A stretch of 64,000 nucleotides of DNA, from sequence record MZ622713.1. One strand, given 5' to 3'. Each line of letters starts with the position of its first letter. The stretch's first letter is position 1. The notes under the pieces are model-generated. The model made no database searches. It worked only from the letters and a program-made list of their open reading frames with translations, and was not told where the DNA came from. The position numbers and the translations under genes are program-made. Shown piece after piece: positions 35,887 through 47,864 of this stretch.

Positions 35887-36213
35887 CGGATAATATATTA
35901 TATGTACTAAACTAAATCCGTCGAAGACCCCCTAGAAAGGATGGGAAAGGGTTATTTTTGCATACGAGTTATAGTAGTACTCCTTAGAGTGATCTATGAG
36001 GTACGAATAGTCACGGTGAGTGTTGTAGTACGAAGTACGTAAACACGATAAAAGGAGTGTACTACGTATAACGAGTAGGTGGGTATAGGTTTGGAATCAT
36101 GTAATAGGGATACTGTGATTCAGTAAAAGAATTTAGTTCTATATAACTTAGGGGTAAATAAAACTGAGTCGTGTAAGTTATTAGTTAATAACGTTAGTAG
36201 GAGAAGATTCAAA
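35887..36213. other. Non-coding island 2 with a multi-branched stem-loop and a promoter motif
   Basis: No ORF. Stem 35974-35985/36052-36065 encloses two smaller hairpins. Shares 9-11 nt words with island 1. Confidence 0.5.
36139..36153 (+). promoter_or_regulatory. Phage promoter motif CTATATAACTTAGGG
   Basis: Matches CTATATAACCTAGGTG upstream of chimallin (47879-47894). Confidence 0.55.
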
Positions 36214-36993
36214 ATGAGTAGAGTGATAACACAAATCAATAACACGAACTTACATCACTTGTGGGGGATGATCGTTACCGCTAAAGGCAAGCCTTATCGC
36301 CAGAACAATGTTACGTTTACGGTTAAAGGTCGTAAACAAGTTCGCCTTACCCGAGCGCAGTGTTGGTTGACACACTTAACTAAATTGAAAGAAGGCTTCC
36401 CTATCCACTTAGTGGACTTAGCGGAGGATTTTCACTTTAAAGAGGTGTTGTTACCGACTTACGAAGATTACGTGGTTCATGCACCTTACCTGACCAAAGT
36501 AATTAACTGGGAAGGTTTAAACCTTTACATCCTCCCCGGGTTCTTAGGGAACGCCGTAGGGGACGACGGTAAGATCTACGAACTGTACGTAGACAATCGA
36601 GCTAAGGAATGGTACTGGGCTGAGATCTACCCTAACCAAAACGAATGCTACGATTTGATCAACAGTATCGATGGGGATATGCTGGAAGTTAGCGTAGACG
36701 ACATCATTTATTTGTTGAAGTCTTCTGTGGTGACTGGTGATGACTTGAGTAACTATTACGCTAAGCGAGTAGTAAGTCGTCGTGCTGAAGTAGCGATCGA
36801 AGATGGCTGGGTAGATGTAGATCCAGAAGACATTTACAAAGCTCAACACGAAGAAGCTTTAAAGCGAGCCCATAAGGACAACGTGTTAGTTCGTTTAGAA
36901 ACAAAACCAAAGACCGTTACAGAAGCTTTCCTATCGGCTTATCGTCGCTGTGGAGAGTTGGCTGTTCCTTGGGATAACCGTCTGGTGTCCTAA
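36214..36993 (+). CDS. Hypothetical protein; central segment weakly reminiscent of a NUMOD4-like motif
   Basis: RBS AGGAG; contains YILPGFLGNAVGDDGKIY. No intact HNH motif seen. Confidence 0.55.
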   Translation: MSRVITQINNTNLHHLWGMIVTAKGKPYRQNNVTFTVKGRKQVRLTRAQCWLTHLTKLKEGFPIHLVDLAEDFHFKEVLLPTYEDYVVHAPYLTKVINWEGLNLYILPGFLGNAVGDDGKIYELYVDNRAKEWYWAEIYPNQNECYDLINSIDGDMLEVSVDDIIYLLKSSVVTGDDLSNYYAKRVVSRRAEVAIEDGWVDVDPEDIYKAQHEEALKRAHKDNVLVRLETKPKTVTEAFLSAYRRCGELAVPWDNRLVS

Positions 36994-37001
36994 TCGTATC
37001 G

Positions 37002-37024
37002 ACCCTATCCCGTCGGGATAGGGT
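37002..37024. terminator. Hairpin upstream of the AraC cluster
   Basis: ACCCTATCCC-GTC-GGGATAGGGT, a perfect 10-bp stem with no long U-tract. Confidence 0.5.
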
Positions 37025-37057
37025 TATGACCATTTATCAAATAATTAAGGATTTATT

Positions 37058-38215
37058 ATGTCCATTCAGATTCCAGAAGTAACTGACCCTAAAGTAGCAC
37101 ACGCGCTAGACATCATTAAAAACCGTTACTTAGAAATTCGTACCGTAAAGGAAGTAGCGGAGCAAATAGGTATTTCCGATAACACCTTAGGTAAACGTTT
37201 CGAGATCAGAGGTTTAAAACCACCTCGTTTTTACCTGAACGGATTACGTAAGGATTATGCGGAAAAACACGTCAAAGAAAACATCAAAACTTTGAGCACT
37301 ATCGCCAAAGAGATGGGATTCAGTAAAACTAACCAACTTCATACTTGGTACCTAGCTGCCTTTGGAGTAAGAGCGACAGAAGTGCGTCGTGGTATCGGTA
37401 TTCCTAAAGAAGCTCACAATGGTAACAAACCACTGTCTGTGATAGCTGGAGAGATTAAAGCGAAGATCGATCAAGAAGCCCACCACATTCAATTTGAACG
37501 TGAGCTGTACCAACCTTATGGATATGGTCGTAATGCTATCTACCTTGCTTTCTCTCAAGCTTACGGTTGCACTGTACGGGAACATTTGATCAACACTCAA
37601 TTAGCGTACGTGGAACGTAAGATTCGCGAACAAGGTTATTGTATCCCGTCTTTGTTGAAGCACACCATTTACAACAACGCTTCAGCTTTGAGTAATGCCT
37701 TTGAACGCAAATACGGTATGTGTTCTAGTGATTACGCGATTAAACATTCCATTGGTGTGAGAACGTTTATATTCGGGGAATCTCGTTGGGTGACGTCAAG
37801 TTTCGTTAAAGAACTGTTAGAACACATCGCTGAAGATTTGTTAACGGCTCGTCAGGAAATGGAAGCGTTGCGTAATTTCTATCAGATCGGTACGAAATCT
37901 TGGAGAGAGATCTTTATCTCTTGTGCTGGCATGAGTCCAAAACAAACTCAACTGGCTATCGAAATGGAGATGATACTTCACATCGTACAAACCACTGATT
38001 GGACTATTCAAGATATCTATGAAAGGCTGAATCGTAGTCGTCGTGACTCTTGGTGTGCGCGTTTCCGTGATTACTTTAACTGTTCACCGGCTCAAGCAAA
38101 GACTAACCCTAAGTTGGTTATCCGTAACTATGACTCAAAACAGTTTAAGCCTTTAGTGGAAGAAGTATTCAATCTGATTGATAAAAACGATGGAGTGGAA
38201 GATCTCGCAGCATGA
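37058..38215 (+). CDS. Protein with three tandem AraC/MarA-type HTH DNA-binding domains
   Basis: VKEVAEQIGIS...IAKEMGFS...FGVRATEVR; second unit ...AFSQAYGCT...FERKYGMCSSDY; third unit ...AGMSPKQ...FRDYFNCSPAQ. No effector domain. Confidence 0.8.
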   Translation: MSIQIPEVTDPKVAHALDIIKNRYLEIRTVKEVAEQIGISDNTLGKRFEIRGLKPPRFYLNGLRKDYAEKHVKENIKTLSTIAKEMGFSKTNQLHTWYLAAFGVRATEVRRGIGIPKEAHNGNKPLSVIAGEIKAKIDQEAHHIQFERELYQPYGYGRNAIYLAFSQAYGCTVREHLINTQLAYVERKIREQGYCIPSLLKHTIYNNASALSNAFERKYGMCSSDYAIKHSIGVRTFIFGESRWVTSSFVKELLEHIAEDLLTARQEMEALRNFYQIGTKSWREIFISCAGMSPKQTQLAIEMEMILHIVQTTDWTIQDIYERLNRSRRDSWCARFRDYFNCSPAQAKTNPKLVIRNYDSKQFKPLVEEVFNLIDKNDGVEDLAA

Positions 38216-38931
38216 ATGACGAATTCAAACAGTTGCTCATGAGTGATCTGAAGGATTGGTTGGAAGATAACTATTTGGGTAAGGTGTCCATGCAAGATAT
38301 TGCTGATCAACTTGGTACCCATATCCCGGTGATGTACGAACTGTTCTTTGAACACTTTGGTTGCACGCCGGGAACCTACTTAATTAAGAAACGACTAGAA
38401 AAAGGAAAGGAGCTGATATCCAAAGGTACCCGACCTACTATAGCGTGTAATTACGTAGGCTATAAACACTTCCAATCATTCCGGACAGCTTACCGTGAAC
38501 ATTTCGGTGAGTTACCCGAAGTGGATTTTGAAGAGTCCATGGATATTCCTACCATGAATGACTATGGTAAAGAAACTATGGACCGATATTATCCATATGA
38601 GTTAAGGATAGAGATATTAAGATATTTGAATGAGAATATCAAAACTAATATCCCATACGGAGATGTGGAGGCAAAATTTAAACTTCCCAACCGTAGTCTA
38701 AATGAAATGTTCCTGCACTTCTATAACCTGACTTACATCGAATGGCGTAGAGACGTGAGAGTCTCAATTGCCAAACGTAAGATTCGTTCAAACCCGTCCA
38801 TCAGTCTTTCAGAACTGGCGGAAGAGGTAGGGTCTTGCAGTTCCCAATATTTGAGTAAGCAGTTTAAAGAGGTTTATGGTATTGCGCCTAAGCAGTACGC
38901 AAAGAAATTGAGAGGTTTATGTGTTAACTAA
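38212..38931 (+). CDS. Protein with two tandem AraC/MarA-type HTH domains
   Basis: SMQDIADQLG...FGCTPGTYL..KRLEKGKELI...VGY...FRTAYREHFGELP; then ...LSELAEEVG..S.QYLSKQFKEVYGIAPKQY. ATGA overlap with the previous gene. Confidence 0.85.
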   Translation: MNDEFKQLLMSDLKDWLEDNYLGKVSMQDIADQLGTHIPVMYELFFEHFGCTPGTYLIKKRLEKGKELISKGTRPTIACNYVGYKHFQSFRTAYREHFGELPEVDFEESMDIPTMNDYGKETMDRYYPYELRIEILRYLNENIKTNIPYGDVEAKFKLPNRSLNEMFLHFYNLTYIEWRRDVRVSIAKRKIRSNPSISLSELAEEVGSCSSQYLSKQFKEVYGIAPKQYAKKLRGLCVN

Positions 38932-39619
38932 AGATCAACAATGGGCGGCTCTAAACATCGCCATTGAGAAACATTACCTTCAAGGTAACGCTCGTGAACT
39001 CATCCTAAACGAACTTGGTATCAGTGAAACTTGCATCCATCATTTGTATTCTGGACGCGGGGACCTAACGCTACATAATCAAATCACCGAACTCCGTATG
39101 TTAAAGGCTAAGAGTTTGTTGGATGACCGATCGATCAAAATCCCTGACATTGCTAAGATGGTTGGTTACAAGGCTGGTAAATCCTTAAGAGAACATTTCA
39201 CTAAGTATTACGGAATGTCTCCTTCGGACTATCGCTTACGTCCTAAGTTCGATGAGCTGACGGAAAAGTTATTTTATCGTCACCCTAAGCTCAACCCGAC
39301 CAGACAACTCGCAGTGAATAACTACGTAAAGCAAAACTGTCGTTCTTCAGAAACCACGGTATATGCAGTAGCTGAGAAATTTGGATTGACTACCAAGGAA
39401 GTAGAGTTGGTTATTAAAGAACACCACGGGAAGAGCTTTAAAGATCATCTAGTGAGTCTGCGGTTGACCCATGTGAGTTCTCGTTTAACCCGTAGTCATA
39501 AGACGGTTCGAGAATTAGCCAAAGAAGCTGGGTTCATTGATTTCTCTTTCTTTGTTAGAAAGTTCGAAAAAGAATATGGCATGGGACCTAACCAATACCG
39601 TACTTGGACTCGTCTGTGA
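38921..39619 (+). CDS. Protein with two tandem AraC/MarA-type HTH domains
   Basis: LRMLKAKSLL...IPDIAKMVGY...FTKYYGMSPSDYR; then ...VRELAKEAGF.D.S.F.RKFEKEYGMGPNQYR. GTG start overlapping the previous stop. Confidence 0.85.
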   Translation: MLTKDQQWAALNIAIEKHYLQGNARELILNELGISETCIHHLYSGRGDLTLHNQITELRMLKAKSLLDDRSIKIPDIAKMVGYKAGKSLREHFTKYYGMSPSDYRLRPKFDELTEKLFYRHPKLNPTRQLAVNNYVKQNCRSSETTVYAVAEKFGLTTKEVELVIKEHHGKSFKDHLVSLRLTHVSSRLTRSHKTVRELAKEAGFIDFSFFVRKFEKEYGMGPNQYRTWTRL

Positions 39620-39647
39620 TTATTTCTTTACCAGATGTCAATTGTAT

Positions 39648-40220
39648 GTAAGCGATGCAAATAACTGAACTTTCTAGTCTAGCGAATCCGAACAACTTGG
39701 TGTATACCGCGTGATCAGTCTAGTACGTTAGATTCTTTAGAGTGTCGCTTACAACCTTTTACTCTTAATCACTGGCGTGTTAGGTGTATAAAGTGCAGAT
39801 CGTCGCCCCCACGACGATCCCTATCCCTTCAGCCCAGAGACTCCTTAGTTTAACAAACATCGATGTGTTATTCTCTCTGGGCTGAACCCTATAAACCCGG
39901 TAGCTCTGACTATTTCCCTTGTCACCTTAGTTGCCTATTGTTGCCGGGTCCCTATTCAAACGGAAGTCGAGCCTTCTGTTTGTAGGACGGCAGTGCCTTT
40001 AACACTACCGTCCACAGCGGTTGACCCCCTGACCGCTTTAGAAATGAGAGTGTTTTCTTCAGCTCCAAACATTCTGATAAGGGGTTGCTATGCTGAGGCT
40101 AGCCGGCTGAGCTTTCGACCGCACAAAGACTAATGTCTTTTGAGAGCTCAGTTCGGATACGTTCAGTAAAGATGTATCATTCCACTGCTTCACCATCCCA
40201 TGAGGGATGGTGCTTTTTTG
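39648..40220 (+). ncRNA. Candidate ~570-nt highly structured non-coding RNA, not matching any family I recognise
   Basis: No ORF on either strand. At least eight 7-15 bp stems, with G-U wobbles mostly favouring the + strand. TATG (phiKZ late promoter, +1 = G) at 39645-39648 coincides with the first stem base. Ends in an intrinsic terminator. Confidence 0.75.
40191..40220 (+). terminator. Intrinsic terminator closing the structured RNA
   Basis: CACCATCCC-ATGA-GGGATGGTG followed by CTTTTTTG. Confidence 0.8.
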
Positions 40221-40259
40221 CATTTTAAATATTTTAACGAAACTTTAAAGGAGTTTTAT

Positions 40260-41225
40260 ATGTCTACATTGCGTGCATGGTGTGTTGGTGGTGCTGGTAT
40301 CAACGTTGGCTCGGCTTGGAGAAAATCCCTAGACCGTTTGCAAGTAGCCGAAGTTGATTTTGTTGGTTTAGATACCTCCACAAACAACCGCCCAGATGAC
40401 GACGCCTTTGTGGTAGAATCTCTAGCCAACACTCGTGGTGGTGGTAAGAAGCGTACTCTAAACCGTGACCTCATCCCTGATTTTGTGAAGCAAATGTTGG
40501 TGAAACATCGCCCGGGCGATTTCAACGTTGTTATCTACAGTGGTGCAGGTGCTTCTGGTTCTACTATCGGTCCATTCCTAGTTCGTGCTATGATGGATGC
40601 TGGTATTCCGGTGGTGTCTTTCTTGATCTTGGATCAAACAACAGACATCGAATTTGAAAACACATTGGCGACCCTTCGTTCCCTTGACGGTCAGCGTAAG
40701 CATTTCAACATGCCTGTTGTTCTTGATGTATTACAAAACAACGAACGTATGACCCGTGGGCAAATGAATGATATCGCCGTAGATCGTCTGAACCTTCTAA
40801 GCTTGTTCTTAACTGACAAACATGAAGAAGCAGACTATGAAGATATCCGTCACCTACTAAACTACTCTAGTGTGATCGATATCCCACCTGCGCTAACCCG
40901 TATCGAGTACTACGATGCTGAAACCCTAGACCAACGTCAAGGTGTTGCTGTAGCTAGTTACTCTTTGTACGACCAGCGTGATAATGTTCGTTCTGTTCAA
41001 ATTGGTAAGGGTTACCGTGTGACTGGTGTAATGTATCCTGACACACGCACTCCTAACAAAACAGGTGAGTTGCACATGATGTTGGAGTACGATAGCATCA
41101 CCGAACAAATCCTAGAAGACTTGGAGCGTTCTGAACAACAAGCCGTGGAACGTCAGTCACGTTTCAATAAAGTTCGTCCTAAAGACCTCACAGAAGGCGC
41201 TGACGGCGATTCAATGGTTTGGTAA
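40260..41225 (+). CDS. phuZ: Phage tubulin PhuZ
   Basis: CVGGAGINVG, GGGKKR and tubulin signature-like YSGAGASGSTIGP motifs; acidic C-terminal tail ending DSMVW. Start set at ATG 40260 behind AAGGAG. Confidence 0.92.
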   Translation: MSTLRAWCVGGAGINVGSAWRKSLDRLQVAEVDFVGLDTSTNNRPDDDAFVVESLANTRGGGKKRTLNRDLIPDFVKQMLVKHRPGDFNVVIYSGAGASGSTIGPFLVRAMMDAGIPVVSFLILDQTTDIEFENTLATLRSLDGQRKHFNMPVVLDVLQNNERMTRGQMNDIAVDRLNLLSLFLTDKHEEADYEDIRHLLNYSSVIDIPPALTRIEYYDAETLDQRQGVAVASYSLYDQRDNVRSVQIGKGYRVTGVMYPDTRTPNKTGELHMMLEYDSITEQILEDLERSEQQAVERQSRFNKVRPKDLTEGADGDSMVW

Positions 41226-41245
41226 TACCTAAGTAACTCTTAACT

Positions 41246-41282
41246 ACGTATGGCATCTTCTAGGTGCCATACGTTTATTTTT
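41246..41282 (+). terminator. Intrinsic terminator after phuZ
   Basis: ACGTATGGCATC/GGTGCCATACGT stem plus TTATTTTTT. Confidence 0.8.
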
Positions 41283-41316
41283 TATATTTTTAGTTTTATT
41301 AAAAACGGGAAGGTAT

Positions 41317-41610
41317 ATGAGCAGAACTTGTCTCAAAATGGTTACTGTGTGTCTCAATGAATACACTGAACTAATGAACAATGAACATTCCGTTTTTAAT
41401 GGAATTGCTTTAGTTCATGAAGCTTTAATCAATTTAGGATATCACGTGCTGAATCTTCACACATCCTTTGAGGATAATGCGAAGTTACACCCAGCTCGTG
41501 TCTTTATTCAAACTGCCCTTGCTGATCAAACGAACGGAATATCGACTGATGTCGATGTTGTAGTTCGTCCATCGATGCCGGGGTGTTATGCAGTCATGTT
41601 TTTTCAATAA
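41317..41610 (+). CDS. Hypothetical protein (97 aa)
   Basis: RBS GGAAGG. Confidence 0.6.
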   Translation: MSRTCLKMVTVCLNEYTELMNNEHSVFNGIALVHEALINLGYHVLNLHTSFEDNAKLHPARVFIQTALADQTNGISTDVDVVVRPSMPGCYAVMFFQ

Positions 41611-41619
41611 GAGGTTTTT

Positions 41620-42093
41620 ATGTACGTTGTCAACACGGGTAAGATTATGCAAGATCTACTCACGTTCGATAAATTGGATTTCGATGACATCTTAATTCAC
41701 GGTTATGCACACGCTTTACTCGAAGATGTTTTACGTGTATTTAACTCTAAGGACTTTGACCAAGCTTACGACCGTGTGGGTCACATGACCACATTGTTGG
41801 GAAATAATACTGCGGTGGAAGTTATTTATATGGACTTGTTGGACCAACTAAGAAGCTACGCTCGTCGCTCTGGTTGGGACCCTCGAATCCGTATGAAGAT
41901 CTGCGAAGATAAAAATGTCAAAGATCGTAAAGGTATCATCCACCAAGTTCTGCTAGTAATGGATTTAGACGCCACGGCAGAGGCTTTGTGGGAAGAGCCA
42001 GATACAACAACTTCTTTAGGAGAACTTGTAAGTGACAACCCAAGTCAAGATGACATATCAAAACTCATCATCGACTCGATCGATAATGGTTGA
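41620..42093 (+). CDS. Hypothetical protein (157 aa)
   Basis: RBS AGAGG; acidic C-terminus. Confidence 0.65.
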   Translation: MYVVNTGKIMQDLLTFDKLDFDDILIHGYAHALLEDVLRVFNSKDFDQAYDRVGHMTTLLGNNTAVEVIYMDLLDQLRSYARRSGWDPRIRMKICEDKNVKDRKGIIHQVLLVMDLDATAEALWEEPDTTTSLGELVSDNPSQDDISKLIIDSIDNG

Positions 42094-47752: not shown

Positions 47753-47864
47753 GAACTGAATACCTATTATATGTAAATAAAACTTTCTCCGACCTCACGG
47801 TTGGAGTGGATAGGACTGGTATCGAAATATTTAAGACATAAAATCGAGTGATTACCGACGTTCT

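What the first reader, a model, noticed from the sequence alone, without database searches (positions are those of the whole stretch)
37058..39619. Seven AraC/MarA-type DNA-binding domains in three coupled genes, with no sensor domain
Seen: 3+2+2 tandem AraC DBDs in translationally coupled ORFs (ATGA and GTG overlaps), none with a ligand-binding domain. The third gene keeps near-canonical signatures (IAKMVGY...F.K.YGMSPSDYR), while the first is divergent. Established: single-domain MarA/SoxS bind about 20 bp and contact the host RNAP alpha-CTD, whereas phiKZ-like phages transcribe with their own RNAPs inside a shell. Tandem multi-DBD AraC proteins are unusual. Inference: (a) modular readers of 40-60 bp sites, (b) decoys or reprogrammers of host AraC regulons such as efflux, secretion or virulence, or (c) protein partners of the large structured RNA immediately downstream, forming an RNP.
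Basis: partly seen in the sequence, partly recalled or inferred. Interest (0 to 1): 0.75.

Follow-up and report, generated by a model that had tools for sequence, protein, structure and literature searches.

The report
Sensor-less AraC domain arrays, jumbo vibriophage
Three overlapping genes of the nucleus-forming Vibrio phage phiKT1019 encode seven AraC/MarA-type DNA-binding modules (3+2+2) with no sensor domain; related phages keep the set, it is probably a group of DNA-binding regulators with unknown targets, and the gene family was already annotated.

Summary
The window is Vibrio phage phiKT1019 (MZ622713).

**What is there**
- Genes at 37058-38215, 38212-38931 and 38921-39619 overlap by 4 and 11 nt.
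- They encode 3, 2 and 2 AraC-type DNA-binding domains. This rests on Pfam HTH_18, my own HMM, AlphaFold models and Foldseek matches to MarA, SoxS and AraC.
- There is no room for a sensor domain.

**Conservation**
- The triplet sits at the same position in all 8 isolates of the subfamily Gorgonvirinae and in 2 metagenomic relatives.
- Each of the seven modules is its own orthologous group: 39-53% identity within a group, 12-19% between groups.
- dN/dS among close relatives is 0.05-0.15, yet the predicted recognition helices vary between lineages.

**What lowers the novelty**
- GenBank and RefSeq already call these genes AraC-type regulators.
- Iyer et al. 2021 cite the gene-3 orthologue as a predicted activator.
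- Sensor-less tandem AraC proteins also occur in bacteria and in an integrase-bearing element.

**Most likely function**
- These are constitutive "single-chain multimer" DNA-binding regulators that read long composite sites.
- Whether they act on phage or host DNA is unresolved.

**The RNA idea**
- The array is always followed by the conserved structured RNA (10 of 10 genomes), even where phuZ was lost.
- That is synteny within one clade, not evidence of a ribonucleoprotein.
- The scan has already followed up this RNA as finding s1-156747.

The verdict is a new variant of a known kind, of moderate interest.

The parts
37003..37023 (+). Hairpin (9-bp stem, 3-nt loop) followed by a T-rich tract, between the stop of the upstream 259-aa gene and g1; terminator-like
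   Evidence: Sequence. All 10 related genomes have a hairpin at this position, with both arms changed together.
37047..37052 (+). AAGGAT ribosome-binding site of g1
   Evidence: Invariant in all 10 genomes.
37058..38215 (+). g1, 385 aa: three AraC-type DNA-binding modules and an acidic C-terminal helix
   Evidence: GenBank UPT54022.1, 'AraC-type DNA-binding protein'.
37079..37402 (+). Module D1 (g1 aa 8-115), net charge +8
37439..37762 (+). Module D2 (g1 aa 128-235), net charge +3
37793..38125 (+). Module D3 (g1 aa 246-356), near neutral in all ten genomes. It is preceded by a beta-hairpin (aa 231-246).
38138..38209 (+). C-terminal helix of g1 (aa 361-384); the C-terminal tail (aa 357-385) has pI 4.1
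38212..38931 (+). g2, 239 aa: two AraC-type modules joined by a conserved linker modelled with low confidence. It is the best conserved of the three genes.
   Evidence: GenBank name 'lactose operon transcriptional activator'.
38224..38541 (+). Module D4 (g2 aa 5-110). Net charge is -3 here but +5 to +12 in the orthologues.
38596..38928 (+). Module D5 (g2 aa 129-239), net charge +7
38921..39619 (+). g3, 232 aa, GTG start: two AraC-type modules
   Evidence: GenBank name 'Msm operon regulatory protein'.
38933..39256 (+).
39293..39616 (+). Module D7 (g3 aa 125-232), net charge +8, the most canonical second helix-turn-helix
39640..39650 (+). AATTGTATGTA motif at the 5' edge of the downstream RNA. 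Candidate phage promoter or transcription start. It is a neighbour and is not shown to belong to the array.
   Evidence: The TATGT core is invariant in the 8-genome alignment, and the motif TATGTR is found 15-27 nt after the g3 stop in all 6 genomes scanned, including both metagenomic relatives. The motif class is depleted in the window and occurs only in intergenic DNA.
39645..40220 (+). Conserved structured non-coding RNA ending in a hairpin plus U-tract (40191-40212). It is a constant neighbour of the array; a functional link is not shown.
   Evidence: Fold z-score -8.5 on the + strand against -3.7 on the - strand. Alignment, terminator, no Rfam match. Earlier finding s1-156747.

Best explanation
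**What the genes are.** g1, g2 and g3 encode sensor-less proteins. Each is a chain of two or three complete AraC/MarA-type DNA-binding modules, and each module has two helix-turn-helix motifs.

**How they most likely work.**
- Classical AraC/XylS regulators bring two such modules together through a ligand-controlled dimerisation domain. These proteins have the modules fused in one chain.
- Each protein would therefore bind double-stranded DNA constitutively, at a long composite site made of two or three adjacent sites of about 20 bp.
- Control would come from when the operon is expressed, not from a ligand.

**What they regulate.** My leaning is that they regulate the phage's own transcription programme. 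They could act as repressors or roadblocks, or as specificity factors for the sigma-less phage RNA polymerases.

**Shown and inferred.**
- Shown: the fold, the domain count, the absence of a sensor, conservation across the subfamily, and purifying selection.
- Inferred: DNA binding, site length, constitutive action and the phage target.

**Odds.** I put DNA binding of some kind at about 0.8. The full statement, including the phage target, gets the confidence given for this explanation.
For: **Fold and architecture**
- There are seven HTH_18 modules with no other domain.
- The seven-helix modules are modelled at pLDDT 84. They match the DNA-binding domains of MarA, SoxS, AraC, XylR and Rns at target TM-scores of 0.7-0.8.
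- A profile of the 2-module proteins matches PDB AraC-family chains one module at a time.

**Conservation**
- The 3+2+2 layout is kept in all 8 isolates and 2 metagenomic relatives.
- The seven modules form seven separate orthologous groups.
- dN/dS is 0.05-0.15.
- Mean net charge is +4.5 to +7 for six of the seven modules.

**Operon organisation**
- Gene junctions overlap or lie no more than 13 nt apart in all ten genomes. This fits joint expression.

**Setting in the literature and in the genome**
- Iyer et al. 2021 (PMC7824862) note that group-1 jumbo phages lack sigma factors and may combine their own transcription factors with their RNA polymerases. They cite QGZ14570.1, which is the g3 orthologue of phage PDCC-1.
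- The array lies in a conserved block next to phuZ and the DNA polymerase gene.
Against: - No binding site was identified. No 9- or 10-mer recurs four or more times in the intergenic DNA of the 64-kb window.
- The predicted recognition helices are the least conserved surfaces between lineages.
- By my reading of the alignment, the first recognition helix carries an acidic residue in D3, D4 and D5, and a non-basic one in D2, D6 and D7, where MarA has Arg. The MarA residue numbering is recalled, not tested.
- D3 is near neutral in every genome.
- AraC-type activation normally works through contacts with the host RNA polymerase alpha-CTD or sigma-70 region 4 (established knowledge). The phage polymerases have neither.
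- The genes diverge much faster than their neighbours. In phiKT1019 versus USC-1 they are 30-51% identical, against 77-79% for phuZ and the 259-aa gene. Fast divergence is more typical of host-interaction genes.
Confidence: 0.42

Rival explanations
1. Host-directed regulators or decoys. The proteins stay in the cytoplasm. There they either bind host promoters normally served by host AraC-family regulators, or they titrate the host RNA polymerase alpha-CTD or sigma-70. Either action would rewire or shut down host transcription early in infection.
For: - The AraC-family mechanism depends on host RNA polymerase contacts (established knowledge).
- The array is an accessory of this lineage. Among 50,697 phage records, full-length matches occur only in Gorgonvirinae.
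- The genes diverge fast, and the recognition helices vary between phages with different Vibrio or Photobacterium hosts.
- Iyer et al. allow that jumbo-phage transcription factors may modulate host transcription.
Against: - No module reaches the equivalog score of any named bacterial regulator.
- No close cellular relative was found in genomes. The nearest hits outside the family score far lower.
- phiKZ-type phages do not need host transcription (established knowledge; also stated in PMC7824862).
- Seven to ten distinct modules kept across the subfamily seems a lot for a decoy.
Confidence: 0.27
2. Architectural or scaffold proteins. Some or all modules have lost base-specific reading. The chains would then bind DNA non-specifically to organise the genome, or use the helical modules for protein-protein contacts.
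For: - The recognition helices are poorly conserved.
- D3 is near neutral in every genome.
- pTM values of 0.48-0.57 point to flexible beads on a string.
- No recurring site was found in the window.
Against: - Each of the seven modules is kept as its own orthologous group under strong purifying selection. That argues for seven distinct, specific roles.
- The second helix-turn-helix keeps its canonical framework in all modules.
Confidence: 0.12
3. Protein partners of the structured RNA encoded immediately downstream, forming a ribonucleoprotein.
For: - The RNA follows g3 in 10 of 10 genomes and starts 15-27 nt after the g3 stop.
- The linkage survives the loss of phuZ in Tidunavirus (PMC10587174).
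- No terminator lies between g3 and the RNA, so read-through co-transcription is possible.
- The RNA is strongly structured, with a z-score of -8.5.
Against: - All ten genomes are one clade, and the whole block is syntenic in them, so the co-occurrence is not independent.
- To my knowledge no AraC-family domain is known to bind RNA.
- The RNA has its own conserved promoter-like motif.
- Neither the array nor the RNA could be found outside this clade to test the link.
Confidence: 0.07

Closest known systems
MarA / SoxS / RamA (sensor-less AraC-family monomers of enterobacteria)
   Same: They share the seven-helix fold with two helix-turn-helix motifs and lack a ligand-binding domain. Foldseek target TM-scores are 0.75-0.81.
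   Different: - They have one module per protein and read about 20 bp. The phage proteins have two or three.
- None of the phage proteins reaches the MarA, SoxS or RamA equivalog scores.
- They act through the host RNA polymerase, which this type of phage does not need.
Classical AraC/XylS regulators (AraC, XylS, RhaS, ToxT, MelR)
   Same: They have the same DNA-binding domain. The functional unit usually holds two such domains that read two adjacent sites.
   Different: In those regulators the two domains are brought together by a ligand-responsive dimerisation domain. Here that domain is absent and the modules are fused in one chain.
Uncharacterised bacterial tandem AraC-domain proteins
   Same: - They have two or more HTH_18 modules per chain, some with no other domain.
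- Examples: P0170 (215 aa) beside SusC/SusD and a cellulase gene; P0160 (235 aa); P0069 (261 aa) and P0007 (677 aa, five HTH_18 stretches) beside ECF sigma genes; P0026 (405 aa, three modules) in an integrase-bearing element.
- ESM Atlas clusters from Bacillota hold proteins of about 200-230 aa that carry only AraC-type domains. They also hold proteins of about 410 aa with an AraC_binding domain that match the 2-module model over 160-179 residues.
   Different: - They are single genes in cellular or temperate-element contexts, and are only distantly related in sequence.
- None forms a three-gene, seven-module operon, and none lies in a lytic nucleus-forming phage.
- As far as I could find, none has been studied experimentally.
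Multi-AraC-domain proteins fused to TerB-C, Hsp70-like or ankyrin domains
   Same: They carry four HTH_18 modules in a row: P0013, P0014 and P0020.
   Different: They carry additional non-DNA-binding domains, and they sit in metagenomic contigs that show no sign of a phage.

Membership tests
AraC/XylS-family DNA-binding domain (Pfam HTH_18 PF12833 / HTH_AraC PF00165) | Sequence match above the curated Pfam cut-off | tested here: met
   HTH_18 scores are 76.4, 94.7 and 105.5 bits against a cut-off of 33.6, with 3, 2 and 2 stretches.
AraC/XylS-family DNA-binding domain (Pfam HTH_18 PF12833 / HTH_AraC PF00165) | Module of about 100 aa and seven helices, with two helix-turn-helix motifs joined by a long helix | tested here: met
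   AlphaFold2 models of g1 and g2 show this. Foldseek matches MarA, SoxS, AraC and XylR.
AraC/XylS-family DNA-binding domain (Pfam HTH_18 PF12833 / HTH_AraC PF00165) | Sequence-specific binding to double-stranded DNA | not testable with these tools
   There are only indirect signs. Six of the seven modules are basic on average. No site was found.
Classical AraC/XylS regulators | N-terminal ligand-binding or dimerisation domain | tested here: not met
   No AraC_binding or other companion domain was found. Residues outside the modules amount to linkers, a hairpin and one helix.
MarA/SoxS/Rob-type stand-alone activators | A single DNA-binding module acting as a monomer | tested here: not met
   There are two or three modules per chain.
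MarA/SoxS/Rob-type stand-alone activators | Equivalog-level sequence match | tested here: not met
   The MarA, SoxS and RamA models score 26-40 bits against cut-offs of 174-250.
MarA/SoxS/Rob-type stand-alone activators | Contact with the host RNA polymerase alpha-CTD or sigma-70 | not testable with these tools
   No test was available.
MsmR / lactose-operon activator (the names in the GenBank record) | Full-length orthology, including the sugar-sensing domain | tested here: not met
   Only the DNA-binding part matches any named regulator. The names come from partial best hits.
TubR-like centromere adaptor for the phage tubulin PhuZ | Occurs together with the tubulin gene | tested here: not met
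   phiKT1028, pTD1 and VP4B keep the array and the RNA, but no phuZ is annotated at this locus. For phiKT1028 and pTD1 the papers confirm that the whole genome lacks phuZ (PMC10587174, PMC11724907).
Protein partner of the adjacent structured RNA | Co-occurrence with the RNA in independent lineages | tested here: inconclusive
   Co-occurrence is 10 of 10, but all ten genomes are one syntenic clade. No member of either was found outside it.
Protein partner of the adjacent structured RNA | RNA binding | not testable with these tools
   No test was available.
Anti-phage defence or counter-defence families (PADLOC) | Match to a defence-system model | tested here: not met
   Only one sub-threshold hit of 15 bits was found.

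The most novel reading that the evidence does not exclude
The AraC-module chains work inside the phage nucleus as promoter-specificity or timing factors for the sigma-less, non-canonical phage RNA polymerases. They might do this together with the co-located structured RNA. That would be the first case of AraC-type domains coupled to a polymerase that has neither an alpha-CTD nor sigma-70.
Probability: 0.15. Interest if true: 0.8.

Novelty: new variant of a known kind. Interest (0 to 1): 0.45.

Why it matters
**The open question.** Nucleus-forming jumbo phages transcribe with their own sigma-less RNA polymerases. How these phages choose promoters and time their gene expression is largely unknown.

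**What this array offers.**
- It is a conserved operon of seven distinct DNA-reading modules, with a fourth multi-module gene elsewhere in the genome.
- That makes it a concrete and testable candidate for part of that control, or for host takeover.
- Fused AraC modules would also be a natural example of single-chain multimers that read 40-60 bp.

**Limits.**
- The family assignment itself is already in the databases and in one review-type paper.
- The architecture exists in bacteria.
- Nothing here shows the target.

The value therefore lies mainly in pointing to experiments.

Tried and rejected
- **Word-indexed protein search with g3.** It returned only the query itself.
- **Related loci in IMG/VR.** The scan returned only the known isolates.
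- **Related loci in bacterial genomes.** Two alignments were too variable to search with. The third found no relative.
- **Complex prediction of g1+g2+g3.** The tool returned no answer, so this is evidence neither way.
- **RNA-seq.** No RNA run was listed, only DNA metagenomes. The timing of expression therefore could not be read.
- **Recurring binding sites.** No 9- or 10-mer recurs four or more times in the intergenic DNA of the window. This is a weak negative, because AraC sites are degenerate and only 64 kb was scanned.
- **Motif scan for the RNA in IMG/VR.**
  - It gave 119+ hits. The largest group, 50 of them, is one gut-phage sequence that looks protein-coding, and nearly all the rest look like chance matches.
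  - Only phage USC-1 was recognised as a relative.
- **TubR/centromere idea for phuZ.** Rejected, because Tidunavirus lost phuZ but keeps the array.
- **Sigma-70 promoters.** They are fewer than chance in this region.
- **Rfam.** Nothing was found in 36000-42000.
- **PADLOC.** Nothing was found.
- **Literature.** Searches for tandem AraC domains, or for AraC in phage nuclei, found nothing relevant.
Full report
**Identity of the window.** Region 36900-40300 is 100% identical to Vibrio phage phiKT1019, MZ622713.1, positions 211740-215140. This phage, also called 'Eric', is a nucleus-forming jumbo phage of V. parahaemolyticus of about 239 kb (PMC10587174). The record already names the three genes 'AraC-type DNA-binding protein', 'lactose operon transcriptional activator' and 'Msm operon regulatory protein'. 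RefSeq names the orthologues 'transcriptional regulator'.

- ORFs 37058-38215, 38212-38931 and 38921-39619 are present on the + strand. The first junction is an ATGA overlap. The second is a GTG start 11 nt before the g2 stop, preceded by GAGAGG.
- Pfam HTH_18 finds 3, 2 and 2 stretches, and the whole-protein scores are far above the cut-off.
- An HMM built from the clear C-terminal modules finds the same 3+2+2 in every isolate.
- AlphaFold2 models of g1 and g2 (pLDDT 84 each) show three and two seven-helix modules.
  - The linkers are short and modelled with low confidence.
  - g1 also has a beta-hairpin (aa 231-246) and a C-terminal helix.
- Foldseek matches each module to the DNA-binding domains of MarA, SoxS, AraC, XylR, Rns and others, with target TM-scores of 0.7-0.8.
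- No PDB chain matches the two-module profile over both modules.
- There is no room and no signal for a sensor domain.

**Distribution and evolution.**
- Full-length relatives in 50,697 phage records occur only in the subfamily Gorgonvirinae.
  - The Aphroditevirus members are Aphrodite1, USC-1, 2 TSL-2019, 5 TSL-2019 and PDCC-1.
  - The Tidunavirus members are pTD1, VP4B and phiKT1028.
- A profile search of 1.84 billion representative proteins added two metagenomic relatives with the same gene order: a 244-kb scaffold and a 17.7-kb contig.
- In all ten genomes the order is: 252-aa gene, 259-aa gene, g1, g2, g3, a gap of 500-680 nt, then phuZ where it is present.
- The gene junctions overlap or lie no more than 13 nt apart.
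- The pTD1 g3 is annotated too short. Its frame is open for 234 aa.
- The seven modules form seven orthologous groups: mean identity is 39-53% within a group and 12-19% between groups.
- Profile-profile scores weakly group the first modules (D1, D4, D6) together. They also link D5 with D7. This fits old duplications of a two-module unit, but it is an inference.
- dN/dS among Aphroditevirus members is 0.05-0.15, so the genes are functional. dS differs from gene to gene between the same phage pairs, which suggests recombination inside the cluster.
- Over longer distances the genes diverge faster than their neighbours. In phiKT1019 versus USC-1 identity is 30, 51 and 42% for g1-g3, against 79% for the 259-aa gene and 77% for PhuZ.
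- The framework residues of the recognition helices are kept, but the exposed positions vary between lineages.
- Six of the seven modules are basic on average, and D3 is near neutral everywhere.

**How unusual the architecture is.** AraC-family hits in the representative library number 328,680 at E <= 0.001, and I could inspect only the best 150. Among them are other multi-module proteins:
- Two-module proteins without a sensor, of 215-261 aa. They lie beside SusC/SusD and glycoside hydrolase genes, or beside ECF sigma and FecR genes.
- A three-module protein in an integrase-bearing element.
- A 677-aa protein with five HTH_18 stretches.
- Four-module proteins fused to TerB-C, Hsp70-like or ankyrin domains.
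- A protein of about 410 aa with an AraC_binding domain followed by two HTH_18 modules. ESM Atlas clusters of similar size from Bacillota match the g2 model over 160-179 residues.

So the fused-module design is rare but pre-existing and uncharacterised. I found no paper on it. Iyer et al. 2021 mention AraC-like predicted activators in group-1 jumbo phages and cite QGZ14570.1. That accession is the PDCC-1 orthologue of g3.

**A fourth gene.** A whole-record search finds eight HTH_18 hits in each of phiKT1019, phiKT1028 and Aphrodite1. Seven are in the array and one lies elsewhere. In phiKT1019 the extra gene is UPT53916.1 (320 aa, record 91346-92308, outside the window, next to the RNase HI gene). 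It has one full module, a weak second one and a half module.

**Transcription context.**
- A hairpin with compensatory changes and a T-rich tail separates the 259-aa gene from g1 in all ten genomes.
- No terminator-like site lies between g3 and the downstream RNA. That RNA ends in a strong hairpin plus U-tract at 40191-40212.
- The motif TRTATGTR occurs only three times in the window, against 10.4 expected. All three copies are on the + strand in intergenic DNA: at 35899, 39643 and 47768.
- The copy upstream of the 259-aa gene lies in a conserved block of about 24 nt that is found in 9 of 10 genomes. The copy at 39643 marks the 5' edge of the RNA.
- I read this motif as a candidate phage promoter class. 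That rests partly on my recollection that phiKZ late promoters carry TATG, which I did not test.

**The RNA link.**
- The gap after g3 folds far better than shuffles on the + strand (z = -8.5, against -3.7 for the - strand).
- It is alignable across the subfamily, with conserved blocks between variable hairpins, and it has no Rfam match.
- Another agent of this scan already followed it up as a new structured RNA (s1-156747).
- Its 5' motifs are present after g3 in both metagenomic relatives as well, so array and RNA co-occur in 10 of 10 genomes.
- The pairing survives the loss of phuZ in Tidunavirus. That ties the RNA to the array rather than to phuZ, and it rejects a TubR-like centromere role for the array.
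- All ten genomes are one syntenic clade, so this is not independent evidence. Nothing tested here bears on RNA binding.

**Mechanism.**
- The best-supported reading is that each protein is a covalent multimer of MarA-like units that binds long composite DNA sites without needing a ligand.
- Whether the DNA is phage or host remains open.
  - For a phage target: the array is kept throughout the subfamily inside a conserved block, and these phages lack sigma factors.
  - For a host target: AraC-family activation normally depends on host polymerase contacts, and the genes evolve fast.
- My odds are 0.42 for phage-directed regulators, 0.27 for host-directed action, 0.12 for non-specific or scaffold roles and 0.07 for an RNP. 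The remainder is unassigned.

**Verdict.**
- The family identity is already known. The multi-module, three-gene organisation in a nucleus-forming phage is a new variant of a known kind.
- Interest is moderate.

Noticed in passing
Outside the window: MZ622713.1 record 91346-92308 (L144:2847-3809): A fourth AraC-type gene (UPT53916.1, 320 aa, phrog_27247) lies next to the RNase HI gene. It has one full module, a weak second one and a half module. A single extra HTH_18 hit outside the array, in an open frame of similar size (328-335 aa), is also present in phiKT1028 and Aphrodite1. The phage therefore carries about 9-10 AraC-type modules in all.
   Followed up: partly
window 35899-35906, 39643-39650, 47768-47775: The motif TRTATGTR occurs 3 times against 10.4 expected. 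All three copies are on the + strand and intergenic. The first sits in a block of about 24 nt conserved in 9 of 10 related genomes, 15-29 nt after the stop of the 252-aa gene. This is a candidate phage promoter class.
   Followed up: partly
window 35887-36213: A 327-nt non-coding leader lies between the conserved motif and the 259-aa gene. It folds moderately better than shuffles (z = -2.9) and might be a structured 5' leader.
   Followed up: no
window 39645-40220: A conserved structured RNA with no Rfam match ends in a hairpin plus U-tract. It is present after g3 in all ten genomes, including those without phuZ. It was already followed up as s1-156747.
   Followed up: partly
L007:5842-6552 (pTD1, NC_041916): The g3 orthologue of pTD1 is annotated as 197 aa, but the frame is open from an upstream ATG and gives 234 aa with both modules.
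   Followed up: yes
L002-L005 (Aphroditevirus loci), genes g1-g3: Synonymous divergence differs strongly from gene to gene between the same phage pairs. For example, USC-1 versus PDCC-1 has dS 0.44 for g3 but is saturated for g1. This suggests recombination breakpoints inside the array.
   Followed up: partly
window 40200-41225: The longest ORF for PhuZ starts at 40200. The annotated and conserved start is the ATG at 40260, preceded by AAAGGAG.
   Followed up: partly
L018, L146, L021, L145 (metagenomic contigs): Bacterial multi-module AraC proteins without sensors sit next to ECF sigma/FecR pairs or SusC/SusD loci. One three-module protein sits in an integrase-bearing element. This protein class appears to be unstudied.
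   Followed up: partly
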